64,000 nt of DNA from Rebecca billardiae RCC1528 (Eukaryota; Protista; Haptophyta), in assembly GCA_965240325.2 (NCBI GenBank), contig OZ251246.1:620001-684000 (forward strand), in the 5' to 3' direction. Below the pieces are notes generated by a model. The model searched no databases. It was not told the DNA's origin and worked only from the letters and a program-made list of their open reading frames with translations. How positions within the stretch are numbered: the first letter of the stretch is position 1; each line of letters begins with the position of its first letter. Shown here one piece after another: positions 2,650 to 29,770 of this stretch. The position numbers were made by a program, and so were the translations under genes.

Positions 2650-2776
2650 GTCGTCTGAATAGTAAAGCTTGTTACAAAGTACTTACGACTACTAAATATA
2701 CTAACTTTGGCGTGTATCTGTGAAGTCCTGTCTAACTTAAACTCTATGAGTCTACCCGTTCGACCGCCTATGCCCT

Positions 2777-8172: not shown

Positions 8173-8211
<39 letters not shown>

Positions 8212-9390
8212 GTGTTATTGGCACAATAATCGATTGTGTCCGCTGGCGAGAAGTACGTGGCCATACCACCCGCCGCCGATCGACTTTGCCCGCTAGCGTC
8301 GTACAGGTACAGGGCGAACCTGTTGGCTCTCATCGAGGTCAATAACGCACCCTCGCGAACGCGCTTGCTGCAGCCGCTTACCTCGGTACCCCGTACGCCT
8401 CCAGCCGAGCTGGCCCACTGCTGGTGACGAAGCGCTATACCTGTTCGCGCATACAGCATCATGGCGGATACAAATAATCCGTCCGCCATCATGCTGACAA
8501 CGGAGCAGTCACCACGTGCGCTCACCATCTCCGCCATCAAGCATCATACAAGCAGCAGCTTTGATTCATCAATGACTACAAACTCGGCGGTCGTCGTCCA
8601 GCAATATTCCAGCTCATCGATTGGCTTTCGTCTACTCATCTGCTGCAGCCAGGCGACGAAGCTGCAGTATCCGCTCGCCAAAGAGCGGGCTCGCCGAAGC
8701 TTCCGCCTCGTCAGATTCGATCTCGGCTTTTCACCCGCACCGGCTGCTTGGCGAGCCAGCCGAGCTCGATTTTCAGCTGCGCTGCTTTCAGCTGTGTGCC
8801 GCCTGTTTCGCAGCCGCTTTCGTGCCAACGCGCACGACGACGAGAAAATCCCAACAAGGAGTGTCTGCATCATATAAGTATGCGCCTGCCGCATCCAGGC
8901 ATTGGTTACGTATGCAGGGTCAAGGACACATATATATATATATACATCATCCTCATCGATATCGAATCACGTCGCGTCATCACGTCAGTCGTCGTCGTCA
9001 TCATCATCAAATTCAATCGCCGGATATCGAAATCGATCATATCTAGCTATACTACTGCTGTCAATTATTATAATATATATATTATATATATGAAAATATG
9101 CCGCCATTATCACATTCATTATTTCACCGCCGCGCCCGCCCGGGCGGCGGGCGACGCCGCCGGCGCCCGCGCCGGCCGGCCGGCCCTGACTCGCCGCCGG
9201 CGGCATCCTTTTAAAATATTTATTATATATAATTATTATATATTATATTATTGCATCATATCATCGCGTCGGTGACTCATGCAGCTGCATCTGCGGCCGC
9301 GCCGCGCCCGCGACTCTGGACGACGCGGACGCCGGCGGAATAATCATCATCATCATCATCATATAGTCATATACTGCGCGGGCGGCATTG

Positions 9391-10932: not shown

Positions 10933-11142
10933 GTCGGTCCCGTCGTCGTCAACGGCGGCTGAGCAAGCCCGAGCGACGCGAGAGTCGGCGTTTGATCGAC
11001 GTGACGACGGATTGCGATTCGATGACGACGATCGCTCGCTAATCTCTATGCCGTTACAATACAATACCCGCCTTCAAATCATTTGGATTGAGATAACGTT
11101 CCGTTTGTTACTTCTTTCTCGAGCGGCCTCCGCGAGTCCGCG

Positions 11143-12285
11143 ATGGCCGCTCGCGCAGGGGCCTCCTTGACTGCGGTCGACGACCGCTTCCTGGCTGCCC
11201 TTGAAACCGCCGGCGTGTCCGAGGCGACGCGCGCGCTGCTTCAGGCAGAGCTTATCGCCACACCACGCGCCGTCATCGCCCTCCCCGACCTCGCGTGGTC
11301 ACACCTGCTCGCGCGCGGCGTGCGCATCGGTGAGCACCCCGTGATCCTGGACGTGGCTCATGCAACCAGGGGCGATGAGCGCTTCGAGAAGCACGGGAGC
11401 CGGCGCGACTTCCAGATCTCGGCGTACGTCGTGAGCGGCTTCTCCGCCGGCCCCGCTCTCGTGCTGGGCATCGTCGACGAGTTCGGCCCGTACTCGGCCA
11501 GCCGGCCACTCACGTGGCTCGAGCAGGCGCTACTGGTCGCGCTGCCGGGCGTGATCTACCAGCTTTTGCTCAAGCGGCTGGTCGAGAAGGTCCGCACGGC
11601 TTTTTCGCTCGATGTGCTGCGCCAGCGCTCGAACGGCATCTCCCTGCGCGAGTCACAGCGCTCAAATCTCACCAATATGGCGATTGTCGCCGCGCTGTTG
11701 CTCACGGTGATCATTGCGATGATCCAGGCGGATCCGCCTTCGGCCGAGGGCGCGGACCGGCTGCTCGCGCAGTGGTACGCGCTCTTCCTCGCCGCGTCCA
11801 CCGTGCCGCTCTTTGGCGCGGTCGTCATGTCCTCGCTGCTCCTGCTGTACATCGAACCGCTCGACGACGACGCCGCGCTGAATTTCATCAGCAGCTTCAT
11901 CAATTACTTTGGCGAGCCAATCATCTCGACGGTCGTCGGCATCTTCAACTTTGTGCCCGCCCTGTCGCTGTGGGCGTTCGGTGTGTACGGCTTCTGGATG
12001 GGCGTGCTCTACACCTTCTCGTCGCTCATGCTCATGCGCAAGGTCGTGCTCACGCAGCTTTACCTCTCAACGTGGGAGAACAGCGCGCTCGATGCTGAGA
12101 CGCGCGAGCAACGCGAGCGCCAGGCGGACACCAAGGTGCACAAGCTCGCCAAGGCGGCCGCCGCGCGCGGCGGCGGCAGCCCACGCAAGCACGCGCGCGC
12201 CGCAGCGGCCGATGAGACACCGTCGGCAGTACCACCCGGGGTGGTGGCTTCCAGTCGGCTCGGGCCGGCAGTTCAGCGTCAATAG
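11143..12285 (+). CDS. Membrane protein with a SAM-like N-terminus and a PGG-like multi-TM C-terminal region
   Basis: 380-aa ORF with coding-like codon use; hydrophobic segments NMAIVAALLLTVIIAM, WYALFLAASTVPLFGAVVMSSLLLLY and others; the domain names are my inference. Confidence 0.7.
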   Translation: MAARAGASLTAVDDRFLAALETAGVSEATRALLQAELIATPRAVIALPDLAWSHLLARGVRIGEHPVILDVAHATRGDERFEKHGSRRDFQISAYVVSGFSAGPALVLGIVDEFGPYSASRPLTWLEQALLVALPGVIYQLLLKRLVEKVRTAFSLDVLRQRSNGISLRESQRSNLTNMAIVAALLLTVIIAMIQADPPSAEGADRLLAQWYALFLAASTVPLFGAVVMSSLLLLYIEPLDDDAALNFISSFINYFGEPIISTVVGIFNFVPALSLWAFGVYGFWMGVLYTFSSLMLMRKVVLTQLYLSTWENSALDAETREQRERQADTKVHKLAKAAAARGGGSPRKHARAAAADETPSAVPPGVVASSRLGPAVQRQ

Positions 12286-13137
12286 GGCTCTGCCCCCGCT
12301 CTGTGAGGCACTGCCTGATGCGGCGCCCGCGGGCGCGGCTCAGGAGTTGCCAAGACGCCGATCGTGATCGACTCATGCCGTGATCGAGGCGGGCCACCGC
12401 CGCCACCGGCCAGACGGGAGAGGCGCCGCAGCGGACCGCGGCCGGCGCCGCTGAGCCTGAGAATTATTTCACCATCGGCAAGGCGGCGACTCACTTGACA
12501 TTGCCAAGTCGTATGGCGGGCCGTAGGTCCGCCCCTTGTAGTGCCCGGGAAAAAGATAAGAAAAAGAAAAGGAAAAAAGAAAATCGCCTCGCAAAGTAGA
12601 AAAGAAAATCGCTTCGCTCACTACCGGGCGCCCTCGCAGCTCCCACTGGGGACGCTCGGCCGAAAACCATATGGCGCCTGGCGCGGAGCGCGTGGGCCGC
12701 GCGCGCCGAATCCAACGCCGGCGCGGACATCGCGCGAGGGATCCCTAGACGGGTTTTCGCCCGATTCGCGATTGCTGCCCTCGTCGTCTCGCGTGCAGGT
12801 CGAACGGGGCCCAAATCGGACCGTTTGATGCGGTACGCTCGGCGCGTCGACACGATCGTGAGACTTGGGGCGATCCTCGCCCGACGTGCACGTCGAAAGC
12901 TCGCACCGGCCATAGCATCATGCGCTGCGCACGATGACCGCCTCGCGCGATCCACCGTCGCGCGTCGGGCTCGGTGCGAGAAAGCCCTCATCACGAGGCG
13001 TCTCGCGGGCGGGAAGCGCCATCGCACGCGACGCAAGATTTGGCGCGGCCTTCTGAACTCGATCGCCGGAATCCGCGCACCGGACTCAGTCCTCGCTCGC
13101 GGTCCGGTCCCTCAGACGAAGCCCACGTCCGGCCTGC

Positions 13138-13790
13138 ATGGCGTCGACGGTGACCAATGCGACGGAAGCGCAGCGCCACACGGCGTACGACGCGCAGCGG
13201 ACGCACCTCCCGGGTCTGTCGCCGTGGCAGCAACCGCGTCATCGCGAGTTGGCGACCCTCGCCGCAGCGCGACACAGACAAGCCCGTGATGCCATCTGCA
13301 GAGAGACGGGACGTCGAGCATGCAACATCGCCGCGCCATCCTCGTCCATGGCGCAGGCGCTGCGGGACGAGGCGGACGTCGTCACGCCGGTGACGGATGC
13401 GCTGCGAATCGTGTGTTTGCTCGAGCAGCTCGTGCCCACTCTCGATCGCGAGTGGCACACGCTGTCGCTGTGCGCGCGCGCGCACAACCAACAGCTCCTT
13501 GTGCCGCCGAACACGCAGGCGCCAGACCTGTCGCACGAGGCGAAGAGCGACGACCGCGCGAACGTCAACGCGCTCGTGCTCAGCGTGGCAGCCGTGCACG
13601 ACGCCAACGCGACCTGCGCCGAGCCCATCATGCCCGGAGCAGACATCGGCAAGCATCCTCGCGACGACCGCTCTCGGCTGGCGGCAGGAGGACATGCACA
13701 TGATCTACTCTGGCGGCTTCGTCGGCGGCGAGGCGCTCGATTACGCCATCGCGGTCGAGATGCGGCACATACAGTGCGTACCCGCGCTCG
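13138..13790 (+). pseudogene. Frameshifted coding remnant, possibly related to Ulp1/C48 peptidases
   Basis: Coding-like frames switch near 13630; ...GWRQEDMHMIYSGGFVGGEALDYAI loosely resembles the Ulp1 DL..L....WLNDEVINFY block; weak. Confidence 0.3.
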
Positions 13791-14072
13791 CGCGGAGCAA
13801 CGGGCTACCCGCCCCGCCCCGCGCGCTGCACATTCCCTCGTGGGTGTGGGCCTCGCTGATGCGCATAAGAGTACAGACTGAGACGTGTCACACGTCGGGG
13901 AGCCAACTTCACGTGTCATCACTGGTCCTTGCACTCGACTGTCCGTAACCCACGGCCACGAGCGAATGTGGAAAGACGCGAACCCGCAAAGGATACATTG
14001 CGACAGCACTGGCACGGCCCGCCGACTCCCCCGCCCGCCAGGGCACAGTGACAGTTTTTAATATAATATTAC

Positions 14073-15913
14073 GAGATAATGTCAGCTGTATTGCCGTTTT
14101 GGAAAGTGTGGTCATTCATCGATCGCGGTTCAGGCTATGCTCTGCCACCAGCGCCGACTTCGTGTCGACGATCGGGCACTGCCGACGACGAATCAGGAGA
14201 CCTGCGCCGTCCTACCTGTGTCGTTAAATCATAGAATGGGTCAGGTGTATTGCCAAACGCACGTTTTGACTACCGCGGTCAGTTGTATTGCCGTTTTCCA
14301 TGTTTGGGAATCACGTGTCAATCTTGTTGCCAACGTCGAATACTTGTGTCAGGTGTATTGCCGTGGATGATGGCCCAATACTTTGTCCAGCTGTATTGCC
14401 GTCGCGCAGTGTGGGTCAGTAATCAGTTGTGTTGCCGTTTGCGCATCTTTGATTCAGGTTTGTTGCCGCGATCGCCCACGCGCTGATGATATGGCGCTGG
14501 CGCCCACGCGTCGCCGGCGTGCGCGGCGTGCCCTTGAGCAGGCCTAGCTGATCCCAGGCCAGAAGAGTGACGTTCAACGACGACGATCTCTGCCGGGGTA
14601 GCGCCGTGTTCCTCGACATCATCAAGCCGAACGACGAGCTGAACCGTGGACCGGAATCTGCACAAACGCTTCCGCATGCGCGCGCAGTGCAACACGCGCG
14701 TGCACCTCGGGCTACTCGCCGTCTACGCGGAGACGGGCGAGAATCCGTCGCGACTTCTATCGAATCGGCGTTGCTCCGTGCTCACTTCGACTCCGGGACC
14801 GTCAAGCGCGCAGTCGATGACATTGCGACGGCAGCGCATGCAGGTGCATGCGTGAAGCAGGGTGAGCGTGAGTTGCCGCGCCCCAATTCGCGGGAGTCGA
14901 ACGTGCACGACGGGCGTGTGCTCTTCAACGGCCTCAAGGAGCTTGACTAACGCGACGCGCGTCCCCCTCACTGCCTGCCATCGACTGTCATTCACACCGT
15001 GGCGATCAACCAACGCGCGTCGCTCTCGCTCGTGCAACACTGCTGGCGCGTGCCTTTTTGCGATTGTCATCACTCCAACAGCAGACTGCCCTGTGGTCAA
15101 CCGTGTGCAGGTGGCTGACCGTGCGCCAGTCGCACTCGTCAACGCAGGCTGATTGGCCCGTGGAGGAGGAAGTCCAAGGCGTACTGCCAGCTGGGACACA
15201 ACGCACCGACCGGCGGGCGGTGCGCCGCGCGCGCCTCGACGAGCCAGCAAGCAGGCGGGGCAGGCGACGCTTCCTGCTGCTGCTGGAACCCGAGTGGCAG
15301 GCTTGGCGAGCGCGGTCGCAGCTTGAGGCGGCGCGTGCAGCGGCACGGGACGCGATGCGGCTCACATGGCCGCTGAAGTAGCAGCAGTCCCGATGGCGCT
15401 GGCGGCCGGCCGCCGGCGGGCGGCAAGCGCGACGGCGACGGGAAGCGCCGACTGCTACTGGAAGTCAAGATGAGCTACGCAGGCCGCATGATGATGGCAT
15501 GTCGGTTGGTTGCAGTCGCGTATCCTGCATGCCGCGCGCAGGCAGTCGCAGCTCTGCACGCACGCGCACACGGGCTGCGCGCGTCTCTTGTCTGAGTGCG
15601 AGTCGTGCCCCAGCCACCAGCTGCTGGCGGCAATACAACTGACACATAGTTATGGAAAGGGCAATATTTCTGAGCAGACTATGTTCAAGCTCGAAAACGG
15701 CAATATTCGTGAACCAAGTAGTGTGAAAGGGTCATTGGTTTGAAACCAGTATTTGAGGGGCAATATTGTTATTGGCACACTATCCAAAAGCGGCAATATT
15801 CTTGACCCATACTACTGAAAACGGCAATACAACTGACCACGGTAGTCATAACGTGCTTTTGGCAATACAACTGACCACACTATCCAAAGCGGCAATACAA
15901 CTGACGTCGACTC
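14073..15913. mobile_element. MULE/foldback-like non-autonomous element
   Basis: GAG...CTC termini; flanks TAATATTAC (14064-14072) / TAATATTAA (15914-15922); inverted arms each built from ~8 GTATTGCC/GGCAATAC-type motifs; 14081-14114 matches the reverse complement of ~15871-15905. Confidence 0.72.
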
Positions 15914-15922
15914 TAATATTAA

Positions 15923-15978
15923 TGATATGATGATGATTGATGATGATGATGACGATGATGATGATGATATGATAATAA

Positions 15979-16009
<31 letters not shown>

Positions 16010-16047
16010 AAGAAGAAGAAGAAGAAGAAGAAGATGATGATGATGAT
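15923..16047. repeat. (GAT)n/(GAA)n compound microsatellite
   Basis: Directly visible. Confidence 0.95.
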
Positions 16048-16862
16048 AACTACTGAGAATATTTAATATAATATATTATTTGAATTATTAGTAATAATAA
16101 TTATTATAAATATGATACCGTACGTGATTTGACACATGACTCTGCCACAGTCCGAACTGCTTCCTCCGAGGCTACCTCCTAGGCTTGCAGTTGGCGCGTC
16201 ATCCCGCATCCGGCCTGAGCACGGGAATTCAGTTGCTTCCTCGGGCCGGGCCCGCAGCTGTGCGGCTGCCGTTTTGTGTGATGGCTTCTGCCATGTCGTC
16301 GTCGTCGTCGTCGTCGGCTGCGGCGGGCGCGTTTGGCTCTTCCTCGTCATCGTCATCGTCGTCATCCAGGTCTTCGATCACCTCGATGTCCCCGCCCAGT
16401 GTTTCGTGCATATCACTTGCTGCGGCGCGCGCGCACGCTCGGGACGAGTCAATCGCATGCCTCTGCAGTTAGACTGCACGCACTGCCGAGGGTCCGTAAT
16501 GCGGCAAGTCGCGCGGTGCACGCAAGTCAGCATACCATCTGCGCTGTAGAAGGGCTTCCCCGACATGAGTCGGCGGTCGCCCGGCTCACGAATGGTGAGG
16601 ACGTCAAAGATGTCGCGAGTAGCAGCCGGGGCTCCGCCATCGTTCGTCATGGGGAGGCCGTGCTGGACTGCCCGGGTGACTAGTCCGAGTTGTGAGTGTC
16701 GGCCTTGCCTTTTGCCGGTTCGATGCTGACGACGACCTCAGGCAGGCGAGATTACGGTACGGCAGGCACGCCTCGTTGAGGATGGCGGTCACACCGACGA
16801 CGCCAGCAACAGTCGATGCCGCCGACAGCAGCTAGGCGGCGGCCAGCGCGCTCATCTGCTCA

Positions 16863-19800
16863 CTATGCCGGCTGCGCCCTGAGCCTCACATACACAGAGT
16901 AGCGCTCGTCGATCACCTCGTTCAGTGGCACGAGCAGCAGCGTGCCGGCAGGCAGCGCGTGCGCGCGCTCGGCCGCGCCGGCGGCTGCCGCGTGCACGCG
17001 CTCAGCCTCCGCCAGCTCTCGCGCACACCAGAAGCTCCCTGCGGGCAGCTGCGCCAGGGGGGCGTGCAGCTCGAACGTGCTCGCTCGCGCGAACGCGAGC
17101 GGGTGGTACTTTCCGTCGCGCGGCGGCGGCTTGCGCGCGACGAGGTCGGACTCGACGCCCGCGGCGGGCTCCGCCAAGCTCGCCGGCCCGCTGGGCGCAG
17201 CGCCGTCCTCGGCAGTCCGGTGCGCGGAGAGGAAGAGCCCGGGGGCCGCCTCCGACTCGAGCGCGTAGAACGCGAGGCCCGGCACGAACCCGTCTCGCCG
17301 CCTCCACCGCGCCTCGCGCGCATTGGGCCCCAGGTCGCACCGAAGGCGCACCGCGCGCTCGGCCGGCATGGCGCCGCTCCGAGAGTCCGGGACAGCGGCG
17401 AGGGCGATGTAGCAGCCTGGCTGGCTGAGCGCCGCGAAGGCGACGGCGGCCGTGCCGTCAGCGGAGGCCACCTCGGCGAACGTCGCCGCGCCCAGCTCAT
17501 CCGTGCCGCCCGCGCGCTCGCTCTCCCGGAAGGGCGCGCGCGGCGCGTCGCCACGACGCAGGAAGAGGCGCCCGTGTCCGTCGTGGGCGAGCGCGCCCGC
17601 GGGCGCGACGAGCGACTTGAAGCGCGTGCGCGCCGCGTCTGGCACGAGGGCGCACGCGCGCGCCACGTCCGCCGGCGCGTACGGCAGCTCGGGCGTCGGC
17701 GACGCGCCGGCGCCGCCTTCGCCGCCGCGCGCGGACGCGCTCAGCACGGCCAGCACCAGGGGCCCCCACAGCAGAGCGTGCAGGCCTCTGAACTTGGCGC
17801 GCGCGTCGGCAAGCGGCTCGGCGCGGAGCTGCAGCGGCAGCTGCAGCTCCAGCGTGTCGCCGGGCTGCAGGCACTGCCCACGCACGCCCGCGAAGGCGGC
17901 GCGCGCCGCGGTGCTCGCGGCCGCGCCGCCGCCCTCGGTCGCCGCCGCCGCGGGCAGTTCGAGGGGGATGGGCTGCCGATTAAAGAGCGCCCGCACCGGT
18001 GCTGAAGGTTGGGACTCGGCCGCGGCGCGCGCCCAACCGGGCACGCGCACCGCGAGCTCCAGGTCGACGCTCTCGGCTTGCGCCGACCCGCCCGCTGCGG
18101 AGGCGGCGCCCCCGCCGCCGCCGAGGCCAGCCGTGCACCGCTGCGCGCGCGCATCCGCCCTGAGCACACGCAGCGAGACAGAGTGCACAGGGCTGGCGCC
18201 AAGCGGCGCCATCTCTGTCAGCTCGACTTCAAGCAGGGCAGCGGCCGGGGCGCCGATGGCCGGCGCGGGCGGCAGCACGGCCCAGCTCGCGCGCGAGGGC
18301 ACGAGCTGCGCGGCGAGCAGCGCCGCCGCCGCGCCGCCGCCGCCGCCGCCGCCGCGCGCCGCGCCGCTGTGCCACGCAGTCGTGTACCAGACGCGGTCGT
18401 TCAGCCGAGCGAAGTTCTCGATGCCAGTTCCAGAGCAGCACCAAAAGTCGCCGTGCGGGACAGCCCAGCCGGAGAGCCGCCACGCCTGCCGCTCGCGCTT
18501 GGAGACGTTGCTCCCGAGCGGCAGGAAGTAGAGCAGCTCGCCGGGCTCGAGCCCGCGCTGCGTGCCCAGGATCCCGTTCAGCACGGCGCGCTCGATGAAC
18601 TCCGCCACCGGCGCGTGCGCGTGCGCCGTCAGCAGAACGTCGGCGAGCCGCAGGTGGTTGTACGTGGTGCAACTCTCCTGGTGCTCCGCGCCCGCCGGGT
18701 GGTGGCCCGCGATCGCCTCGCCGAGCTCGTGCGGCCTTCCCCACATCTCGGCGTGCGACGTGCCGCCCGTCGCGTACGCGTGCGCGTCGCCGAGCGTCCG
18801 GTACAGCCGGCGTGTCAGCCGCGCAAAGTGCGCCTCGCCCGTGAGCGCGTGCCGGCGCGCCGCCCCGAGCGCGATGGGCAAGTGCGTGTTTGCGTGCAGC
18901 CCGTCGAGCGGGTGCAGCGGCCGCTCGGCCGGGGCGCCGGGCACAGGCTTCGCGCCGACGAAGCAGCGCTTGTCGTACAGCGAGGCGAGCCGGCTCCACC
19001 GCCGCTCACCCGTGAGCGCGGCCAGCCGCCACAGCACCTGCGGCGGCGTGGGCGCACGGGCGCGCGCGGACGCGAGGCGCACACGCGCGCGCGTGGGCGC
19101 GCGGGCCGCCACCGGTCTCGCGAGCTGCCGGGGGTGCGCGGGCGTGGCGCGGCTCCTTCGATCTGCCGTGGCGCGCGCGGCCGGCCCGCCCCTCCGGCGC
19201 GGCGCACCTCGTTGAACCCGCCGTACTCCATATTCAGACTCTCCTGGAAGTGGTCAAGGCCGTTCTTGGAGATTGCAATCTCGGCGCGCCGCTCCGCGTA
19301 TTCGCCAAACTTGAGCACGACGCCGAGCGCCGCCTCGCTGCCGGCGAGCTCGTGCATGTCGAGCAGCCCGGCGAGCACCTTGTGCAGCGTGTACAACGGC
19401 GCCCATACCGGCTTGTGCTCCTCAAAACGGTCGAGCAGCGAGTCCGGGAACGCCTGCGGGCGAGCGGCGCGCGGCGCAGGGCGAGCGAGGGCGGCGTGTG
19501 TGCCAAGGGCAGAGGCGGCGCGGGGATGCGCGCGCGCACGCGGCGCGGGCGTGAGCGGGCTTGCGCGCCGCGCCCTCGCGCGCGGGCCGCCGCGACGCGC
19601 ACACGCGCACGCCGCGCACGCGCGCGCGGCAGGCGCGCCGCGCGTGCGCGCCCACGCACAGACACGTAGCCTGTTCCCAGCTTGGCCTGGCACTCTGCGA
19701 TCGCGGCGACGACCGCGCGCGCCTTGGCGGCGAGGGCGGCGTGGTCGAGGCTGGCGATGAGCGCCGCGGCTGCGGAGAGCCAGTGCCCCAAGAAGTGCCC

Positions 19801-20436
19801 GCGCAGCTCCGAGCCCGGGTGCTCCCAGCCGGTGAGCGGCTGCGCTCCGCGTGTCGGCAGCTTGGCGAGCGTCCGCCAAGACCACAGCAGCGCGTCGTGG
19901 TCGAGCGCGAGCAGGTACTCGAGGTCGGAGGCCTGGGCGCGCTGGAGCCGCGTGCCCGGCGTGAGCACCACGGCCGAGAGCGGCAGGCCCTCGAGCTTGC
20001 TCCGCGGCCGCTCCGCCTCGCCGAGCGGAGGCGCATCGAACGGGACCTCGATTCGAATGAGCTCTCGCTCCTTCATCGGGAATCGCTCGAAGCGGAAGCC
20101 AGGCCCGGAGTAGTCAGGGCAGCGCTTCGTCTCGGTGGGCGGCGACACACCGCCGTCACCGTCGTCGCGCAGCTCGTCGTCCGCAAGCGGCCATGCCGCG
20201 AGCACCGCCGGCGGCGCGGCGCGGGGCAGCGCTGCGCGCGCTCGTCGCTCCTCGAGCCGGCGCATGCTCGCAGCAGTCGCGGCCGAGGCCGCGGCGGCAG
20301 CCTCGGGGGCCGAGGCGCGCGTGTTGGCGAGGAGTACAACCAGCGGGTACGCCATGCCGACGCCCAACGTCGCGGCGAGGAGCGCGCATCGACCGGGCCG
20401 GCCTGGTCGCCGCTGGTCCCGATGACGCGGCGCCAT
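16863..20436 (-). CDS. GH127/GH146 (DUF1680) beta-L-arabinofuranosidase-like glycosidase with a C-terminal AbfB-like region; exons 20436-19660, 19453-19208, 19037-16863
   Basis: Motifs GWE..ELRGHFLGHWLSA, GYVSAFP (across the splice), WAPLYTLHKVLAGLLD, EYGGFNE, HANTHLP, ESCTTYN, FWCCSGTGIE; N-terminal TM anchor; GT-AG introns in phase. Confidence 0.92.
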
Positions 20437-21114
20437 GATTATTATAATGTTGCGCAACCTTCCGCATTCCGTCTCAAGTACAGTTTATTTGTTTTAACGT
20501 GCGTAAGGCTCACGGTGGCAGGTTGCCGCGCCATCCTTCATCGCACGCTCTCCGAAGAGAGACCTGGAAACTGACAGTAGCCTACTCTGTCCCTGATCAA
20601 GACCGTGGATCTACAAGCAGTACAGCAAGGGCCCTTGAGTACAGTGCGTCTATACTTCGGATTGTAGTTGCCGATCGTACGCTGCCTCAGCCGAGTCTTC
20701 AGGCGAGTGTATCAGGGCGCCGCCGGGGTGCCGGTCGGACTCAGCCAACTAGCAGTGCTGAAGGAAAGAAATCGCGGTGCTGAGGATTTGCTGTCGTTGC
20801 TGTGGTCGTTCTGAATAATAACATGCTGCTGTTCATGGTCACGTACACCACACTGGAAATATATGCTGATGAGGCTTATGACGATGGAAGTGAAGTCGCC
20901 GAGCCTGCACGAGTCGTCAAGCCCGTGTGTCGCATGCGGTTGCGAGCCCCTGTCATCGCTGTCCGTGCAGGAGCCCGTCTGGTCCTAGTCCTACAATCTC
21001 GCATCAACACGGCCGCAGTAGCAGATGATGATGAGATGCCTGCCGTGATGATACACACGCGGCGATGCGCCACTGCATGTCCTCGATCAAATGAAGCAGA
21101 GTGCGACGCGCGCT

Positions 21115-24100
21115 CTACTTCTCGGCGACGTCCGTGTCCGAATCGTCGCTGGCCGCGCCCATCGCCTCGATCTCGCCCGGCGAGATGCCAAACTTGAGGA
21201 TGTGGATCTCCTCGCCGGTGAGCCCGGTCTTCTTGAGCGAGGAGAAGTCGACCTCGCCCAGCCGCGAGAAGGTGACGGACACCGACTCCTGCATCGCCAC
21301 GAGGTCGGCGGTCTGCGGGCCCAGAGGTGGGTGGGGAGGCGTTCGCGCGGGCGGTCGCGTGTCAGCGCGCGGGCGCGGGCGCGACTCGGCGGCTCGCGCG
21401 CGCCCGCGACCTCGCGCGACGGGCGCGCACCCTGCCGCGCAGCTCCGCGAGCGGGATGATGTCGAGGTCGTCCGCTGATCTCGCCGTCGTGTCGAGGTCC
21501 ACGCCGATCTTGCTCCGGAAGTACTCCACGCGCAGCGGGTTGCGCGCCGCGTACTTCTTGACCTCGACCCAAAAGTGCGCCTGGCTCGCCTTGACCGCGT
21601 CGGCGCCCTCGTCCGTCTCGAGGCGCGTCACCTCCTCGACCCGCTTCTTGAACTTGTACGCGACCTTGCGCTGCTCGCGCACCCACTTGGACAGCACGAC
21701 GGCGATGCCGCACAGCTCCTCGCGCTGCTGGACCGTCGCCATGTCCGCCGCGCGCTTCTTGGCCGCGTGCTCGGACAGGTTGCGGATCAGCCGCTCGTGC
21801 GAGCCGTTCTTGGCGCCGCGCAGGTTGAGCAGCATGCGCGTGAGCTGCACCTCGTTCGACTCCTCGCGCTCCGTGTCGTCGAGCGAGGTGTTGCCGTAGA
21901 AGTCCTCGACGTTCGGGTCGATGCCCTCGCAGTCGAGCAGGAAGTGGCACGCGCCCACGTGCCCGTTCGCCGATGCGAGGTGCAGCGCCGTCCGGCCCTG
22001 GTGGTCCTGGATGTTGACGTTGCACCGGTACTTGACGAGCCGCTCGAGCTGCGCCACGTTGCCCTCCGCGCCCGCCGTGCACATGTACGCGGCGCTGTCG
22101 AACGTGGCGCCGAGGTTGGCGTCGCGCGCGAGCAGCAGGTCGCACACGTCCTCGTGCTTGGCGTGCACCGCGTCCTGCAGCGGCGTCACGCCGTACCGGT
22201 CGACCGCGTTGATGTCGGCCTTGAGCTCGAGCAGCAGCTTGACGTTCTCGATGATCCCCTCCGCCGCGGCCACGTGCAGCGGCGTGCGCTTGTTCGCGTC
22301 GCGGCAGGTCACCTCGCCCACCGTGTCGTACCGCAGGATGTAGCGCAGCGTCTCGAGCCCCTCCGGCTTGCCCGCGGCCGCGCACAGCTTCTCGACCGGG
22401 TCCTTCATCAGGCGCTTCGCGCCCGCGGCCTCGAGCATCTTGGCCGCCTCCATGTGCTTCTCGCGCAGCGCCTCCTCGAGCGGCGTGCCGCCGTACCGGT
22501 CGGCCACGTTCACGTCCGCGCGGTGGCCGAGCAGGAACTGGACCACGCCGAGGTGGCCGAAGCACGCGGCGAGGTGCAGCGGGCGGCGGCCGTTGACGTT
22601 GGCGTGGTTGACGCTCACGCCGCTCGCCGAGATGATGCGCCGCGCCTTATCGCGCTCGCCGTTCGCGCACGCCGCGCACAGCTTGGTGAGCATCAAGTCC
22701 TCGCGCTTGCGCTTGATGTCCTTGATCATCATGCGCACGTTGTCGAGGTGCGAGGAGACGTCGGAGGACGAGTCGGCGAGCGAGTTGCTCATCGTCGTCG
22801 ACGACTTAGTCGTCGACGACTTGGCCGCGGAGTACTTGCTCGAGTGCGCGGACGTCTTCGAGCGGCCCGAGCGAGCCGTCATCGCGCCTGCATCCCGCGC
22901 GGCACCCGGCGCGGCGCGGCGCGCGCATGTGAGCGCGCATGCGCGCGCGCTCGCGCTGTCGCGGCGCGTCCGACGGCCGGCTCGCGGTGACGGGCGTGGC
23001 GAGGGCCGCGGAGCGTGTGCTCGCGCGGCGTGCGTGCGGGCGGGCGCGCACCGTCATACTGGCGGATCGCGTTGTCCATGATGTTGTCCTCGTCATCGGG
23101 GAAGGCCTTGAGCAGCTCGACATAGTCCACGCGCTGCACAATGATCACCTTGGACTCCATGCCGGCCGCGGCGCGCGCGTTCTGGAAATGGCGGATGCCG
23201 AAGACGAAGGGCACCTCGCCGAGCGTGTCGCCAGGGCCGGCGTTGCCCGCGGGCTCGGGCTCGGCGTCCGCCACCTCGGCCTCGTTCGTGATGTCGAGCG
23301 AGCCCGTCCACACGATGCAGAGCTCCTTGCAGGCCTCGCCCGCGCGGAAGAGGAACGCCTCCTCCTCGAGGATCCGCTCGCGGAGCACGGCGGCGAGGCG
23401 GTTGAGGAAGCCGTTCGAGGTGTTCTCGAGCAGCGACGCCTGGCCCACGATCGCGCGGTACATGTACACCGACACGTCGATCTGCAGCGCCACCGGCATC
23501 GCGGCGAACATGTCCTCCGCCTTGACGGACGAGCCGGACGACTCGGTGACGTGCGCGCGGAAGAAGGACTCGATGTCCTCCTTGAGCTTGGTCGAGATGA
23601 TCGCGTGCTTGAGGAACTCCTGCACCGTCTCGATCTGCGCGCGCTTACCCACCAGCTCCGCGTCCTGGTTCATCACCAGCGTGGAGATCTGGCCGACGCA
23701 CCACGCGTCTGCGGCGCGCGCGCGGCGCGGGCGGCGCGCGGGCACCGGGCGTGCGTGAGCGTGAGCGCGCGGCGCGCGGCGCGCGGCGCGCGGCGTGCGC
23801 GCGCGGCGCGGCGCGGCCGGCACGCACAGATGGTGAGGTTGAGCAGCATGAGGATCAAGAAGAGCGCGATCTCGGCGAAGTTGACCGGCACCTGCGTCAG
23901 CCCGAGCGTGGTGATCATGCTCATCACGAAGTAGAGGTTGATCAGGTAGCGCGTGAAGAGCGCCTGCTCGGCCGGCACGGTGACAAAGTCGAGGTGCTTG
24001 CCGATGGCCGCGGCGTCCTCGGTGTACGCGTCGAGCCACGTGCGCTCGCTGAACGAGTGCTCGGAGATGAGGTTCCAGAAGCACGCCATGTAGTGCGAGG

Positions 24101-26620
24101 CGAGCAGCAGCACCGAGATGTAGTGCCACAGCCAGCTCGACATGTCGTCGTCGCCGAGCGACGCGAGCCACGCCTTGTGCACGCGCCACGCGTGGCGCAG
24201 GTTGATGAGGCGCATGAGGCGCAGGCCATACACGACCTCGTACGGCTCGTTGAAGAGCAGCGCGATCCCGTCCTGCGGCAGCGCCGCGATCAGGTCGGGC
24301 ATGCAGTCCGTCATCAGGTAGCGCGCGCGGATCATCTTGGGGTCGACGACGGTGACAGAGTTCTCGTTCACAAACGACGTGCAGAACTTCATCACGATGC
24401 GCAGCCAGTACAGCGCGTCGATCGCGCCGTTGAGCACGGGCATCCAGTGCAGCCGGCTCGTCTCCGAGAGGAAGCACAGCATGATGGGCACGAACATCGC
24501 GTCGTACGTCACGCACGCGATGAAGACGCGGTGGAAGTTGACGTAGAACTTGGACGTGTGGTCGAGCACGTACCACGGCTTGATCTCGACGCGGCCCTCG
24601 CCGCCGTTGGTCATCTCGCGCAGCCGCTGCTTGCGCTGCACGAGGTGGTTGCGCACGCGCTCGTACGGCGTGAGCTTCATGCCCTGCTCGGCCACGCCGA
24701 TGCTCGCGATGCGCAGCTTGTTGCCCTGCTCGCGCAGCTCCTCCGCGACGCGCATCCACGACACGTAGCCCTCCGACTCGGCCGTCATCGCCTGGCCAGC
24801 CCACTGGTCGACGCCCGTCTCGGCAGCCTGGGCGGCGGTGGCGGCGGCGTGCCCCGGCGGCGCGAGCTTGATCTCGAGGTTCTGCTCGCACCACTGCCGC
24901 AGGTGCTCCGCCGATTCCGGCCCCATCTTGCGCAGCGTGACCGTGTGCGACGCGAACGTCAGCAGCACCTCGGGGTCGGCGAGGTCCTGCGCCTGGAGGC
25001 GCGCCGTGTCGATGCGCTGGTCGATGAGGTCGGCGAGCGCGATGTACGCCGCCCACGACCTGAGCGCGGTGTCCAGGTCCTCGATCGACGCCGGCGCGTC
25101 CACCTCCTCCGACTTCTTGCCCGCAAGCTTGAGGACACCGGCGCCGGCGCCGTGCGAGTCGCGGCCCTTGGTCACGCCCAGCTTGAGCTTGAGCGGCGAC
25201 TCGACGGCCTGGGCGCCGCCGAGGTCGTCGCCGCCCTCCTGCTCCGACGCGCGCTCGCTGTCCTCCTCGCCCTCCTCCGCCGGCGCCTTCTCGTTCGCCT
25301 CCGTCTCGGCGCTCGCGAGGATCCAGCGCGAGACGCCGATCGCAAAGTGCGTGCGCGAGAACGACTTGGGCTGCTTCTTCGCCTTCTCGGGGTTCATGAG
25401 GGCGTCGGCGTCGTCGGGCACCTCCTCGGGCAGCATCGCCTTGTACACCTTCGAGCGCAGCGCCTCGACCTCGCCCGTCGCGTCGCGCAGCGCCCCGAGC
25501 AGCGCCTTGATCTCCGAGCCGCCCATCTCGCCCAGCTCGTACTGCACGATGCGCACGTCGCTCAGCTTGATCGCGTCGCGCCGGTTGCGGTCGAAGACGC
25601 GGAACATGCGGCTGATGACGTACGCGGCCTCGGCGGCGGAGCCCGGGGCATTCATGGCCTCGCCCAGCGCGTTGAGCAGCGCGTCGCCGCTCTGCTGGTT
25701 CTCCTCGCCCTCCGCGGCGCCGGCCGTCATCCCCGGCTGAATCTTCTGCCCACTGCGACGCCAGCGGCTGTTGCGCCCGCCTCCGACCGGCGAGTCGGGC
25801 GGCGTGTGCGGCGGCGTGCTGCCCGTGCCGCTCGTGCGCGCCTTGGAGTGGCGGCCGCGCGGCTGCGGCGAGTCGTCCGCCTCCTCCTCGCCGCCGGCGG
25901 CGGCGGCGGCGGCCTCGGCCGGCGTCATCGACACGCGCACCGTGCGCGCGTGCCGCGCCGCGAGCGTCTCCACAAACTTGCGCGAGCTGAAGATCGCGAC
26001 GTGGCCGACCTCAGAGAGGTAGAGCTTGCGCACCGGCCCGGCGAGCGAGGCGCGCCGCGCCGCCTCCATCGCCGACGCGCGCCGCGCCGACGACGACTTG
26101 GGGTTGCGCGTGCCGTCGATGACCACCGGCTTGCCGAGGCCCTCAGACACGACCTTGGATGGCGAGGTCAGCTGCTCGGCGTCGGCGTCGGCGTCGGCCG
26201 CGCTCGCGGGCGCGTCGGCGACGGCGGCCTCGACGGCGCTGGGCGGCGCGACGGCGCCGATCCCCGGGAACGCCGGCGGCGCGTCCGCCTCCGCCTCCAT
26301 CGTCGCCAGCATCGCCTGCTCCGCCTCGAACTCGTCCGGCTGCGGGGGCGCGACGTCGCCCAGCATCACCCGCATCTCCTGATAGATCTCGTCCGCCGCG
26401 CGGACCGACTCGGACTCGGAGAGGCCGTACGAGGCGAGCAGCTTCTTGACGGCCTCGTGCTCGGCGCGCCGGCGCGCGAGCTCGTCGCTCGTCGTCGCGC
26501 CCGCCAGCCCGACGTGCTCCTCGTACTCCGCCTTGATGCGCTGCAGCCCGGCCTCCGCCTTGGGCAGCCGCAGCACGAGCCGCACAAACTCCTTGGCCTG
26601 CGTCGTCTCCTCCGTCTCGC

Positions 26621-26651
<31 letters not shown>

Positions 26652-29600
26652 CTTGGCGTCGGCGTTGGCTGCGGCGGCTGCGGCGGCGGCCACCTTCGCC
26701 TCCGCCTTCGCCGCGGCGATGCTCGCGCTCTGGGCGCCCACGCCGCCCTCCTCCTCCTCCTCCTCCTCCTCGTCGTCCAGCTCGGCCTCCTCCTCGTCGT
26801 CCTCGAGGCCGTACGCGGTGATCCAGTGGTCGGTGTGCCGCAGGATGGCCTTGTACAGCGCGGCGTGCAGCTTCTGCAGCTTGTGCAGCTGCTCGTTCAG
26901 GTCGTTGAACGAGAGGCCGACCTCGCGCCGCTTGGCGTTCTTGGTCACCGTCAGCTGCCGCCGCTCCTCCTGCAGCGCGTGCAGCTTGTGGATCATCTCG
27001 TACATGGGCAGCACGAGGCACTGCTGGTAGAGGTCCTGCAGCACCTGGTCGTGCGCGCAGCTCTTGGGCAGCGTCGCGTCGTTGTGCTTGACCAGGATCG
27101 CCGCGGCCTCCAGGTTGGTCTTGAGCGCGTCGACGAGCGGCGTGTTGCCCCAGCGGTCGATCGCGTTCACGTTGGCCGCCTTGCCGACGAGGTAGTGCGT
27201 CGCGGCGAGCGAGCCCGAGGCGACGACGAGGTGGAGCGGCGTGCGCCCGTCGTAGTCGAGCGCCTCGAGCGACGCGCCCACCTCGACGAGGAACTGCAGG
27301 TTCTCCGCGTCGCCCTCGTTCGCCGCCTTGCGCATCTTCTTCGCCATCCGCTCCGGGTCGGGGATCGCCATGTTGACCGCGAGCAGCTGCGTCACGATGC
27401 GCTGCTCGTTGGCGATCGCGTCGTCGATGGCGGTCATGCCCCAGCGGTCGACCGCGTTCACATCGGCGAGCTTGGTGAGCAGGTAGTCGACGACGCGCAC
27501 GTTGCCGATCGCCGACGCGAGGTGGAGCGCCGTCACGCCGTCGTGGTTCGCCACGTTGATCGCGACGCCCTGCGAGACGAGCAGCGTCATGTAGTTGAGG
27601 TCGCCCGAGATCGCGGCCTCGTGCATGCGCGCCGCCGCCTCCGCGAGCTCCAGGATGCCGCCAAAGCGCTGCAGCTCCTCGGCGACGGCGGTGTGCCGGC
27701 CGGTGACCGCGTCGGCGATGGGCGTGGCCTCCCAGCGGTCGCGCGCGTCGATCTGCGCGCCGAGCGAGCACAGCGTCGCCACGACCGCCGTGTGGCCCGA
27801 CGACGCGGCGAGGTGGAGCGTGGTGCGGCCGTCAAAGTCGCCCGTGTTGATGTCGAAGCCGCGCGCGACGAGCGAGCGCACGGTCTCGACGTCGCCGGTG
27901 ACCGCGGCCGTGAACATCTGCTGCAACGCGTTCACCTTGCGCTCGAGGATCGCGAGCCGGATCACCGCCTTGATCTCGGCCAGCTCCTTCGCCTCGTCCT
28001 CGTCGAGCTCGCCCGTCGACTCCATGTTGAGCTCCTCGCCGCTCTTGCTCAGGCCGAACTTGCGCAGCACGTTGCGCACGATCAGGTCGGACTGCTCGGG
28101 GTACGTCTTGATGATCTCCTCGTACGAGTCGTGCGAGAAGACGAGCAGCTTCACGTCCGAATCGGGCGTCGCGCGCACCGTGTACGGCTGCGGTACGCCG
28201 AGGAAGAAGGCGGTCTCGCCGACGAGCTGCCCCTCGCCCAGGTCGGAGCGGATCGTCGTGATGTGCACGTCGCCCTTCATCACGTTGAGCGCGCCGAGCA
28301 CGCACCAGAGCAGCTCGTGCGAGCCGTCGCCGCGGAGGAGCACCTGCTCGCGCGGCATCACGAACCGCTCGGTGACCTCGAGCGCGATGGCGCCGAGGAG
28401 CTGCTCCGTCGTGCCGAAGAAGCACCACGACGCCTTGCAGTGGCCCATGTACTGCTCCGACGCGTAGCGGAAGCGGAGCGCGTGCGGCATCATGCCGATG
28501 ACGCGGAGCGCGCCCGTCGCGGCCTTCTTCTGGCGGTACTCGAAGTAGTCGCGCATCAGCTCGGCGAGCTCCTCGGGCAGCTTCTTCGTCTCGATGAACG
28601 TGTCGAGCGTCTTGATCAGCGCCTTGAAGTGCACGACGTTCTCGTCGGTGCGCACGAGGTAGTGAAAGAGCGTACCGAGCACGAAGGCGTAGAAAATGAT
28701 CTGGATGACGGCGATCAGGCAGGCCATGACGACCTCGTACTCGTTCGCGATCATCACGCCCGCGTAGCCCATCGCGGTGACGCCGCCCCACGCCATGAAC
28801 GACGACATCAGGTAGCGCTCGATGCCCTCGGTCAGGCCGGGCGTGAACTCCTCGGTGCGCGCCATCGCGTGCAGCTGCGCCGGCCACGAGGGCAGCTCGA
28901 GCGGGCCGTGGTCGTGCTGCTCCTGCTCGGCGATGAACCACCAGACGCAGCCGACCCAGTGCGGCACGGAGACGAGCACGAGCGAGAACTTGAACACGCT
29001 CAGGAACGTCACGTTGGTCGAGAGGTCCTGGTTGATGTCCTCCATCGCGATCGTGAGGTCGTACACGCGCAGCAGGCGCACGAGCTGGATGAGGAGGAAC
29101 GGGTCCACGCCGCCGCGCAGGAAGAAGAAGGCGCGTGCGGCGTACAGGCCGACGATCGAGAGCGCGTCGACGAGCACCCAGCGCGCCGTGTACCGCCAGT
29201 GCACGATCACGGCGTGGTTGTTGTTGTGGGCGGCGCGGCCGTCCTTGGTCTTGTAGTTCTCGCGCACCTCCGACCAGATCCAGACCATCTCGAAGATCTG
29301 CCACGCGGCGCGCGAAGCCGAGCCGACATGACGCGCAAGGCATGCACGCACGCGCGCGCGCACGCGGGGCCGTGAGCGGCTCGGCCGGCGGCGTGGGCGC
29401 GCGCGCGCGCGCGGCGCTCGCGTCGCTGCACTCGCGCTGCGCGCACGTCTGTGATCAGGTCGATGGCGATGAAGAAGGGGTCGGCGATGACCCACAGCGG
29501 GTAGGCGACGCGCACGGGGAGTGCCAGCTCCTCGTACATCAGCATCAGCAGATGGATCAGCTTGTAGAGCGACGACCACTTGTCGTACAACTCGCGCTCG

Positions 29601-29770
29601 ATCTCGCGGTTGAACTCGTCGGCTTCCTTGTCGTTCTGTGCGGTGAGCACCTGGCGCCAGCGGATGTGCTTATCCGCGCCGCGAGGCCGCTCGTGCGCGT
29701 GGAGGATGCCCTTCAGCGATGCCGGGCCATGGCGCGCTCCGAAGAGCACGGCTTTCAATGCTTCGAGCAT
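21115..29770 (-). CDS. Tandem two-module Shaker/CNBD/ankyrin cation channel (~2701 aa); exons 29770-29447, 29297-23828, 23708-23052, 22887-21431, 21312-21115
   Basis: Four GT-AG introns join in frame (8106 nt). Module 1: S4 LVRLLRV, pore TAMGYAG, CNBD GETAF..PQPYTVR, ankyrins (DFDGRTTLHLAA). Module 2: S4 LRLMRLINLR, pore TTLGLTQVP, CNBD LGEVPF, ankyrins (NGRRPLHLAA). Confidence 0.9.

What the first reader, a model, noticed from the sequence alone, without database searches (positions are those of the whole stretch)
21115..29770. Single polypeptide containing two complete Shaker-CNBD-ankyrin channel modules
Seen: five exons splice in frame to ~2701 aa with the order TM/pore-CNBD-ANK-linker-TM/pore-CNBD-ANK. 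Both pores lie in one 5.5-kb exon with no stop codon between them, so the fusion is not a splicing artefact. Established: plant Shaker channels (AKT1, SKOR/GORK) are single-module tetramers with CNBD+ANK, and the PQPYTVR CNBD motif recalls SKOR; two-domain TPCs lack CNBD/ANK, and sea-urchin CNGK has four domains without ANK. Inference: this is a two-repeat CNBD-ankyrin channel acting as a dimer, an architecture I do not recognise as characterised.
Basis: partly seen in the sequence, partly recalled or inferred. Interest (0 to 1): 0.85.

Follow-up and report, generated by a model that had tools for sequence, protein, structure and literature searches.

The report
Doubled GORK/SKOR-like ankyrin ion channel
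One algal gene encodes two different, complete plant-Shaker-like channel units (voltage sensor, pore, nucleotide-binding-like domain, ankyrin repeats) in a single 2701-residue chain. It belongs to an old, untested family and is a new variant of the tandem CNBD channels described from sequence in 2020.

Summary
On the minus strand, five exons joined by four GT..AG introns give an 8106-nt CDS of 2701 aa. The domain order is 6TM/pore, C-linker-CNBD, ankyrin, an ~840-aa linker, then the same three parts again. Both pores lie in one 5470-nt exon. That exon has no stop and 95-100% GC at third codon positions throughout, linker included, so this is one coding sequence and not two genes.

Full-length collinear homologues of 2.3-3.0 kaa exist, several on intron-less transcript contigs. 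They come from Diacronema lutheri, MMETSP algae, Rhodelphis marinus, Cymbomonas and Bryopsis. First repeats and second repeats form two separate, well-supported clades, so the fusion is ancient.

By sequence profile and by predicted fold, each module is closest to the plant outward rectifiers GORK and SKOR. The pores differ: TAMGYAG in module 1 and TTLGLTQ in module 2. Neither CNBD has the cNMP-binding arginine.

Most likely it works as a dimer forming one two-fold-symmetric, non-K+-selective pore; this step is inferred. Two-repeat tandem CNBD channels without ankyrin were described from sequence in 2020 (PMC7576140), so this is a new variant.

The scan found paralogues of this gene before on other DNA of the same genome. 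No RNA run was listed for this gene.

The parts
21115..29770 (-). Whole gene: 5 exons, 4 introns, CDS 8106 nt, 2701 aa
   Evidence: All five exons show the same codon-position GC pattern (GC3 0.88-0.99), which is lost upstream of the ATG and in the introns.
29447..29770 (-). Exon 1 (aa 1-108): N-terminus, S1 and the start of S2 of module 1
   Evidence: The N-terminus aligns from residue 2 with residue 5 of the transcript-derived homologue P0001.
23828..29297 (-). Exon 2 (5470 nt, aa 109-1931): rest of module 1, the linker, and S1 to mid-S6 of module 2
28656..29578 (-). Module 1 membrane part, S1-S6 (aa 65-322, spans intron 1). S4 (29043-29105) has only two arginines.
   Evidence: phmmer against AKT5, SKOR and hERG gives E about 1e-17. 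In the AF2 model the S4 and S5 helices are separated by about 5 residues.
28758..28778 (-). Pore filter of module 1: TAMGYAG, a K-channel-like GY with the second G replaced by A
   Evidence: Most first repeats of homologues keep GYG.
28047..28655 (-). C-linker and CNBD-homology domain 1 (aa 323-525). The phosphate-binding cassette (28170-28220) reads ..VPQPYTVRA, without the cNMP-binding Arg.
   Evidence: Pfam cNMP_binding 26.4 bits, alignments to AKT5 and GORK, beta-roll in the AF2 model.
27072..27896 (-). Ankyrin domain 1 (aa 576-850, about 8-9 repeats), preceded by a long bridge helix (27897-28001)
   Evidence: Pfam Ank_2 E 3e-34; AF2 helix pairs, pLDDT above 90; Foldseek alignments of about 620 columns to GORK/SKOR, long enough to reach past the CNBD into the ANK region.
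24540..27071 (-). Cytosolic linker (aa 851-1694). It is coding throughout and partly low-complexity, with conserved blocks at aa 1001-1100, 1351-1450 and 1501-1550.
   Evidence: GC3 at least 0.90 in every 120-nt window and 0 stops. Conservation against four homologues. No Pfam domain.
25488..25607 (-). Degenerate EF-hand-like helix-loop-helix in the linker (aa 1339-1378)
   Evidence: The F..FD motif is invariant in five homologues. Weak EF-hand_7 match in P0001 (E 0.15) and real EF-hands at the same relative place in P0157 (E 2e-8). EF-hand clusters recur in the Atlas search at 0.87-0.88, which is a lead only.
23668..24539 (-). Module 2 membrane part, S1-S6 (aa 1695-1945, spans intron 2). S4 (24168-24236) has four Arg and one Lys.
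   Evidence: Pfam Ion_trans 23.4 bits here and 39-49 bits in P0001/P0002.
23892..23912 (-). Pore filter of module 2: TTLGLTQ, with no GYG
   Evidence: Most second repeats in the family lack GY; one Rhodelphis second repeat has GY.
23052..23708 (-). Exon 3: end of S6, C-linker and CNBD-homology domain 2. The cassette (23170-23220) reads ..GIRHFQNARA, with the Arg shifted by one position.
   Evidence: Pfam cNMP_binding 30.9 bits; alignment.
21431..22887 (-). Exon 4: Ser/Thr-rich spacer, ankyrin domain 2 (21779-22726) and a helical C-terminal region
   Evidence: Pfam Ank_2 E 1e-38; collinear with P0001 and P0016.
21115..21312 (-). Exon 5: acidic C-terminal tail and stop codon
   Evidence: GC3 0.97; no Pfam match.

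Best explanation
This is an intact nuclear gene of a GC-rich, haptophyte-like alga. It encodes one 2701-aa membrane protein made of two non-identical GORK/SKOR-like channel modules. The modules are 24% identical to each other. Each has S1-S4, a pore, S6, a C-linker, a CNBD-homology domain, a bridge helix and an ankyrin domain. They are joined by an ~840-aa cytosolic linker that carries a degenerate EF-hand.

Shown here: the gene structure, the continuity of the coding sequence, the domain content, the family, and the age of the fusion.

Inferred:
- Two chains dimerise so that two module-1 pore loops (TAMGYAG) and two module-2 pore loops (TTLGLTQ) surround a single pore. This would be a pseudo-tetramer with built-in two-fold symmetry.
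- With only two GY-type strands, the pore is probably a weakly selective or non-selective cation pathway rather than a K+-selective one.
- Voltage sensing would rest mainly on module 2, because module 1's S4 has only two Arg.
- Both CNBDs lack the canonical cassette Arg, so they probably act as non-cNMP-binding gating rings, as in plant Shakers.
- The two different ankyrin domains may pair as a fixed version of the ANK-ANK latch that lowers GORK, SKOR and AKT1 from C4 to C2 symmetry.
For: Gene model and continuity:
- GT..AG introns and a 2701-aa ORF.
- GC3 of 0.95-1.00 all along exon 2 and 0 stops in the linker against 13 expected.

Collinear full-length homologues:
- P0001 (2647 aa) is an uninterrupted ORF on an 8108-nt MMETSP transcript contig.
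- P0016 (2704 aa) sits on an 8395-nt transcript-like contig with an in-frame stop upstream.
- The same M1-ANK-M2-ANK order occurs in 14 representatives. They include two from Diacronema lutheri, three from Rhodelphis marinus, and one each from Cymbomonas, Bryopsis and a Gymnodinium transcript.

Tree of 50 modules: first repeats form one clade (100/99) and second repeats another (100/97), with parallel branching inside each.

Kinship:
- Profile of first repeats against the PDB: GORK 210 bits, SKOR 206, KAT3 172, hERG 151, HCN 137.
- Profile of second repeats: GORK 261, SKOR 251, AKT1 226.
- AF2 model of window module 1 plus ANK (pLDDT 84) and of module 2 of P0016 (pLDDT 82): the top 16 Foldseek hits of each are all GORK or SKOR chains, at E 1e-22 to 7e-31.

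ANK-driven C4-to-C2 symmetry in GORK, SKOR and AKT1 is reported in PMC12742848.

From established knowledge: in K2P, TPC, Nav/Cav and CNGK, all pore repeats of one chain line the same pore.
Against: - There is no RNA or protein evidence for this particular gene; no sequencing run was listed.
- Dimerisation, the one-pore arrangement, selectivity and gating are all untested.
- The 840-aa linker is long enough to allow other assemblies or cleavage.
- Pfam scores for Ion_trans (23.4) and for the first cNMP_binding (26.4) fall just under the curated cut-offs when exon pieces are scanned.
- The module 2 structure was modelled on a 40%-identical homologue, not on the window protein, because the window's module 2 is split by introns.
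- No land-plant Shaker sequence could be put in the tree.
Confidence: 0.6

Rival explanations
1. Four chains assemble. The four module-1 units form one pore and the four module-2 units form a second, tethered pore. This would give a twin-pore complex rather than one heteromeric pore.
For: The linker is about 840 aa, long enough to let the modules separate. Each module is a complete GORK/SKOR-like unit. A stand-alone relative of the second-repeat lineage exists: P0100 is a full-length single-module transcript with stops in its 5' UTR.
Against: - The 1:1 fusion has been kept across haptophytes, green algae and Rhodelphis, with parallel branching of the two repeats.
- The loss of GYG is almost entirely on the second-repeat side, which fits a shared pore.
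- No concatenated channel I know of builds separate pores from its repeats (own knowledge).
Confidence: 0.15
2. The polypeptide is a precursor that is cut in the disordered linker. This would release two different subunits, which then form a 2+2 heterotetramer.
For: The linker has Ala-, Glu- and Ser-rich low-complexity stretches with poor conservation (aa 950-1000 and 1250-1300).
Against: No protease site or processing domain was found. Parts of the linker are conserved, including an EF-hand-like motif, which suggests it has a role in the mature protein.
Confidence: 0.1
3. Module 2 has lost conduction and serves only as a voltage-sensing or regulatory appendage, or the whole protein is a non-conducting scaffold.
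For: The module 2 filter has no GYG in this protein or in most relatives. Both CNBDs lack the binding Arg.
Against: The pore helix, the filter glycine, S6 and the Pro..Asn..Glu motif after the filter are conserved in second repeats. The module 2 model is confident through the pore domain.
Confidence: 0.1
4. The gene model is an artefact: two neighbouring single-module genes happen to be read through in one frame.
For: In 69% GC DNA long ORFs arise easily. The antisense strand of exon 2 is also open for 1874 codons.
Against: - GC3 of 0.95-1.00 in the same frame runs through the whole linker, with no UTR-like or promoter-like stretch.
- There are 0 stops against 13 expected.
- Linker blocks are conserved.
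- Homologues are single uninterrupted ORFs on transcript contigs.
Confidence: 0.03

Closest known systems
Plant outward-rectifying Shaker channels GORK and SKOR (Arabidopsis; solved structures such as 9l9u and 8jec)
   Same: Each module has the same order: non-swapped 6TM, C-linker, CNBD-homology domain, bridge helix, ankyrin domain. GORK and SKOR are the best matches of both modules by profile and by fold. The QP[FY]TVR cassette without the cNMP-binding Arg is shared with module 1. The ankyrin repeats are organised in triplets.
   Different: - Here there are two different modules in one chain instead of one per subunit.
- The filters are TAMGYAG and TTLGLTQ instead of TVGYG.
- Module 1's S4 has 2 Arg against 4 in GORK (PMC12742848).
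- There are about 8-9 ankyrin repeats instead of 6.
- No KHA domain was found.
- Identity to GORK/SKOR is about 20%.
[quoted passage not shown] 2020, PMC7576140)
   Same: Two 6TM-CNBD repeats lie in one chain. First and second repeats are at most 30% identical and form separate, co-branching clades. These channels are known from sequence only.
   Different: - The published ones have no ankyrin domains; the word is absent from the paper and its supplements.
- They have an R/K-rich S4.
- In the no-ANK two-repeat proteins of my sample, both repeats keep TVGYGD.
- Those proteins form their own clade, away from both repeats of this family (100/99), which points to an independent fusion.
CNGK, the four-repeat K+-selective CNG channel of sperm
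   Same: It is a concatenated CNBD-family channel in which the repeats of one chain build one pore.
   Different: It has four repeats, canonical GYG filters, an intact cNMP-binding Arg and no ankyrin. The four-repeat proteins in my sample form a separate clade.
Two-pore channels (TPC1)
   Same: Two 6TM repeats per chain; works as a dimer; asymmetric filter; the plant TPC1 linker carries EF-hands (own knowledge).
   Different: TPCs belong to the domain-swapped Nav/Cav-like lineage and have no C-linker, CNBD or ankyrin. The resemblance is convergent.

Membership tests
CNBD-channel superfamily (KCNH, HCN, CNG, plant Shaker, SthK) | 6TM voltage-sensor and pore core | tested here: met
   Module 1: phmmer E 1.7e-17 to AKT5 from S3 to the CNBD. 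Module 2: Ion_trans 23.4 bits in the window piece and 39-49 bits in P0001/P0002. Profile E-values of 1e-61 and 1e-76.
CNBD-channel superfamily (KCNH, HCN, CNG, plant Shaker, SthK) | C-linker and CNBD fold directly after S6, with a short S4-S5 link (not domain-swapped) | tested here: met
   cNMP_binding 26.4 and 30.9 bits. The AF2 model shows four C-linker helices, a beta-roll, and about 5 residues between the S4 and S5 helices.
Plant Shaker channels, ANK-bearing type (GORK, SKOR, AKT1) | Ankyrin domain after the CNBD-homology domain | tested here: met
   Found in both modules. Foldseek alignments of 620-740 columns to GORK/SKOR chains are long enough to reach past the CNBD into the ANK region.
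Plant Shaker channels, ANK-bearing type (GORK, SKOR, AKT1) | TxGYGD K+ selectivity filter in every subunit | tested here: not met
   Module 1 has TAMGYAG and module 2 has TTLGLTQ.
Plant Shaker channels, ANK-bearing type (GORK, SKOR, AKT1) | One module per polypeptide, four polypeptides per channel | tested here: not met
   Two modules lie in one 2701-aa chain.
Plant Shaker channels, ANK-bearing type (GORK, SKOR, AKT1) | C-terminal KHA domain | tested here: not met
   No Pfam match in exon 5 at E up to 1 or in exon 4 at E up to 0.01, and none in the C-terminus of P0016 at E up to 1.
Plant Shaker channels, ANK-bearing type (GORK, SKOR, AKT1) | Groups with land-plant Shakers in a tree | not tested
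   No land-plant sequence could be obtained; the word-based search returned only fragments of this family. The only evidence is ranking against solved structures.
Two-repeat tandem CNBD channels (PMC7576140) | Two 6TM-CNBD repeats in one chain, with first and second repeats in separate co-branching clades | tested here: met
Two-repeat tandem CNBD channels (PMC7576140) | Same lineage as the published dinoflagellate and oomycete tandems | tested here: inconclusive
   The no-ANK two-repeat proteins in my sample (one from Bicosoecida sp., the rest unnamed metagenomic) form a separate clade (100/99). They match the paper's description of an R/K-rich S4. The published sequences themselves were not in the tree.
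CNGK | Four repeats, with a cNMP-binding Arg in the cassette | tested here: not met
   Two repeats; the Arg is replaced by Gln in module 1 and shifted in module 2.
TPC | Two Nav/Cav-type 6TM repeats without a CNBD | tested here: not met
   Both repeats carry a C-linker and CNBD, and their best matches are CNBD-family channels.

The most novel reading that the evidence does not exclude
The family is a naturally hard-wired C2 version of the GORK/SKOR channel. GY-type and non-GY pore strands alternate around one pore, giving a selectivity class not seen in plant Shakers, for example Na+/Ca2+-permeable or non-selective. The two divergent ankyrin domains form a permanent ANK1-ANK2 latch, possibly tuned by the EF-hand-like linker. 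If so, the symmetry reduction recently seen in GORK, SKOR and AKT1 would be an ancient, genetically fixed design principle in algae.
Probability: 0.3. Interest if true: 0.75.

Novelty: new variant of a known kind. Interest (0 to 1): 0.55.

Why it matters
Plant Shaker channels are textbook homotetramers. Their ankyrin-bearing members were recently found to break four-fold symmetry through ANK pairing.

This algal family writes a two-fold arrangement into the gene itself, with two co-evolving, unequal modules and unequal pore filters. It is conserved across haptophytes, green algae and Rhodelphis.

It therefore offers a natural test of three things: how many GYG strands a pore needs for K+ selectivity, what ANK-ANK pairing does to gating, and how often concatenated channels arose. 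It also shows that tandem CNBD channels are not confined to the SAR group.

For annotation, it warns that gene callers split or truncate these loci. Examples are P0157, which is the second half of a tandem locus, and the D. lutheri model KFE25_003141, which appears to lack S1-S2.

Tried and rejected
- **RNA evidence for this gene.** The look-up of sequencing runs on 23650-29600 listed no run, so read laying was never used.
- **Second word-based homologue search** (module 1). It gave only five fragments of the same family and no named plant Shaker, so land-plant sequences could not be added to the tree.
- **Pfam on the linker and C-terminus** at E up to 1. Nothing credible came back for the window protein; SPX and PCM1_C at E 0.2-0.4 were dismissed as noise.
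- **Atlas search of the linker**. EF-hand clusters scored only 0.87-0.88, under the 0.9 level, so this is kept as a lead.
- **Naming the no-ANK two-repeat proteins**. They sit on unnamed metagenomic contigs, so their identity with the published oomycete and dinoflagellate tandems rests on shared features only.
- **Is the window from Diacronema lutheri?** Rejected on present evidence. The window is 69% GC against 75% for the D. lutheri locus, and the best D. lutheri protein is 43% identical.
- **Hidden intron or intergenic gap inside exon 2.** Rejected: no 120-nt window has GC3 below 0.90.
- **Plant-Shaker label as a generic CNBD-family resemblance.** Single-sequence searches could not separate the families, but profiles and folds put GORK and SKOR clearly first.

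Full report
**Observation**

The region is about 69% GC, so long ORFs occur on both strands. On the minus strand a 1998-codon open frame (29669-23676) contains two channel cores.

Reading the junctions gives five exons: 29770-29447, 29297-23828, 23708-23052, 22887-21431 and 21312-21115. The four introns are 149, 119, 164 and 118 nt. All start GTGCG and end CAG, and all keep the frame.

Pfam on the exon pieces gives the claimed order:
- Exon 2: cNMP_binding, then ankyrin, then Ion_trans.
- Exon 3: cNMP_binding.
- Exon 4: ankyrin.

The Ion_trans match (23.4 bits) and the first cNMP_binding match (26.4 bits) fall just under Pfam's cut-offs. The first membrane core is missed by Pfam because S1 lies on exon 1. 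It matches AKT5, SthK, hERG and SKOR at E about 1e-17.

**One gene or two?**

Third codon positions are 95-100% G+C in every 300-nt window of exon 2, in one frame, straight through the linker. No 120-nt window drops below 0.90. Introns and flanks lack this pattern.

The 2430-nt linker has no in-frame stop, against 13 expected from shuffles; none of 1000 shuffles had zero. So there is no room for a stop, a UTR or a promoter between the two pores.

No RNA run could be listed for this gene, so direct transcript evidence is missing. Relatives supply it:
- P0001 (2647 aa) is an uninterrupted ORF on an 8108-nt MMETSP transcript contig.
- P0016 (2704 aa) is an ORF at 83-8197 of an 8395-nt contig, with an in-frame stop upstream. 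Its composition matches the window's (GC 0.70, GC3 0.97).

The window protein is collinear with both. Module 1 pairs with module 1 at 34-43% identity and module 2 with module 2 at 35-40%. Cross-matches between modules reach only 24-27%. Blocks of the linker are conserved too.

**The family**

An exhaustive HMMER search with module 1 found 3283 relatives, many of 2200-3000 aa with two matched stretches. My domain mapping shows the order M1-ANK-linker-M2-ANK in 14 representatives.

Where named, they come from:
- Diacronema lutheri (two genes)
- Rhodelphis marinus (three transcripts)
- Cymbomonas tetramitiformis
- Bryopsis sp.
- a Gymnodinium smaydae transcript
- MMETSP transcripts and marine metagenomes

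One apparent single-module hit, P0157, is the second half of a tandem locus split by gene calling. P0100 is a true single-module transcript.

A careful tree of 50 modules gives these clades (the quick 82-row tree agrees):
- All first repeats, with a few single-module proteins including two from Mesostigma: 100/99.
- All second repeats, with P0100 as sister: 100/97.
- Two-repeat proteins without ankyrin: their own clade, 100/99.
- Four-repeat proteins: their own clade, 100/97.

Branching inside the two repeat clades runs in parallel: a haptophyte-type group, a Rhodelphis group and a green-algal group. The fusion is therefore old and inherited as a unit. It appears independent of the no-ANK tandems.

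**What each module is**

Single-sequence searches could not separate the CNBD-channel families. Profiles could:

| Profile | GORK | SKOR | Next best hits (bits) |
|---|---|---|---|
| First repeats | 210 | 206 | KAT3 172, AKT1 169, SthK 159, hERG 151, CNG 146, HCN 137 |
| Second repeats | 261 | 251 | AKT1 226, KAT1 213, hERG 211 |

Predicted structures agree:
- An AF2 model of the window's S2-to-ANK1 piece has pLDDT 84.4. Its 16 best Foldseek matches are all GORK or SKOR chains, at E 3e-26 to 1e-22 over about 620 columns.
- An AF2 model of module 2 plus ANK2 of the homologue P0016 has pLDDT 82.1. Its top 16 matches are also all GORK or SKOR, at E 7e-31 to 7e-26.
- Global TM-scores are only 0.3-0.5. 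This probably reflects differing domain orientations, which was not tested.

The module 1 cassette ..PQPYTVRA aligns with GORK's ..SQPFTVRV and AKT5's ..PQLFTVRT.

**Functional residues**

- **Filters.** Module 1 reads TAMGYAG; most first repeats in the family keep GYG. Module 2 reads TTLGLTQ, and most second repeats in the family lack GY (one Rhodelphis second repeat has it). By contrast, both repeats of the no-ANK tandems and all four repeats of the four-repeat proteins keep T-x-G-Y-G-D.
- **S4.** Module 1 has two arginines; GORK has four (PMC12742848). Module 2 has four Arg and one Lys.
- **Cassette Arg.** The cNMP-contacting Arg is Gln in module 1 and displaced by one position in module 2. 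The four-repeat proteins keep the canonical Arg-Thr-Ala.
- **Linker.** It carries a degenerate EF-hand-like motif (aa 1339-1378) with an invariant F..FD. P0157 has real EF-hands at the matching place. Atlas support is weak.

**Mechanism**

Shown: one chain holds two complete but unequal GORK/SKOR-like modules, and the topology is consistent. With six TM segments per module, the linker starts and ends in the cytosol.

Inferred: two chains supply four pore loops to one pore, as in every concatenated channel I know of (K2P, TPC, Nav/Cav, CNGK). The resulting two-fold pore, with only two GY strands, would be poorly K+-selective. The CNBDs would be structural gating rings rather than cNMP sensors.

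ANK pairing between neighbouring subunits lowers GORK, SKOR and AKT1 from C4 to C2 symmetry and autoinhibits GORK (PMC12742848). The two divergent ankyrin domains here may be a fixed form of that latch.

Rivals that remain open are a tetramer of chains with two separate pores, cleavage in the linker, and a silent module 2.

**Novelty**

PMC7576140 (2020) reported two-repeat tandem CNBD channels from dinoflagellate and oomycete sequences. It found none elsewhere, never mentions ankyrin, and lists haptophytes and chlorophytes only as single-repeat. It is the only paper in the library that uses such terms for channels. Searches on Shaker evolution in algae found no description of a doubled Shaker.

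So this is a new variant of a known kind, and it is functionally untested.

Earlier notes of this scan flag at least six other such genes in the same genome. One follow-up (s1-332070) reached the same reading as mine. I had reached mine before reading it, and I tested it independently here.

**Limits**

Earlier notes call it haptophyte-like, and the closest named relatives are from Diacronema.
- Module 2 was modelled on a homologue.
- No land-plant sequences are in the tree.

Noticed in passing
window 12-776 (+): ORF with a strong ELO (GNS1/SUR4) fatty-acid elongase match (E 1e-53). It runs from near the window start, so it may be incomplete at its 5' end.
   Followed up: partly
window 16863-20457 (-): The next gene downstream on the same strand matches the GH127 beta-L-arabinofuranosidase catalytic domain in two ORF pieces (E 2e-33 and 3e-17), so it probably has at least two exons.
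   Followed up: partly
window 23751-29375 (+): An 1874-codon ORF lies antisense to exon 2. It is a by-product of the ~98% GC3 codon bias of the sense gene, not a gene, and shows that ORF length alone means little here.
   Followed up: yes
window introns 29298-29446, 23709-23827, 22888-23051, 21313-21430: All four introns are short (118-164 nt), start GTGCG and end CAG. They are more GC-rich than the exons at all three positions (0.76-0.95), made largely of CGC/GCG runs.
   Followed up: partly
window about 1199-1582: A long (TA)n-type microsatellite, read as IYIYIY... in one ORF.
   Followed up: no
L006 (JGI metagenome contig), 2599-10123: The database proteins here, a 625-aa CNBD+ANK gene and the 1515-aa P0157, are two halves of one tandem channel locus split by prokaryote-style gene calling. 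'Single-module' hits in metagenomes can be artefacts.
   Followed up: yes
L001 (Diacronema lutheri JAGTXO010000038), gene 10001-20133: The deposited model KFE25_003141 (P0002) starts at the position matching residue 149 of the window protein. It probably lacks the exon or exons for S1-S2 of module 1.
   Followed up: partly
P0116 (Gymnodinium smaydae transcript, 2616 aa): A dinoflagellate transcriptome holds an ANK-bearing two-module protein of this family. Whether it belongs to the dinoflagellate, its prey or a contaminant is open.
   Followed up: no
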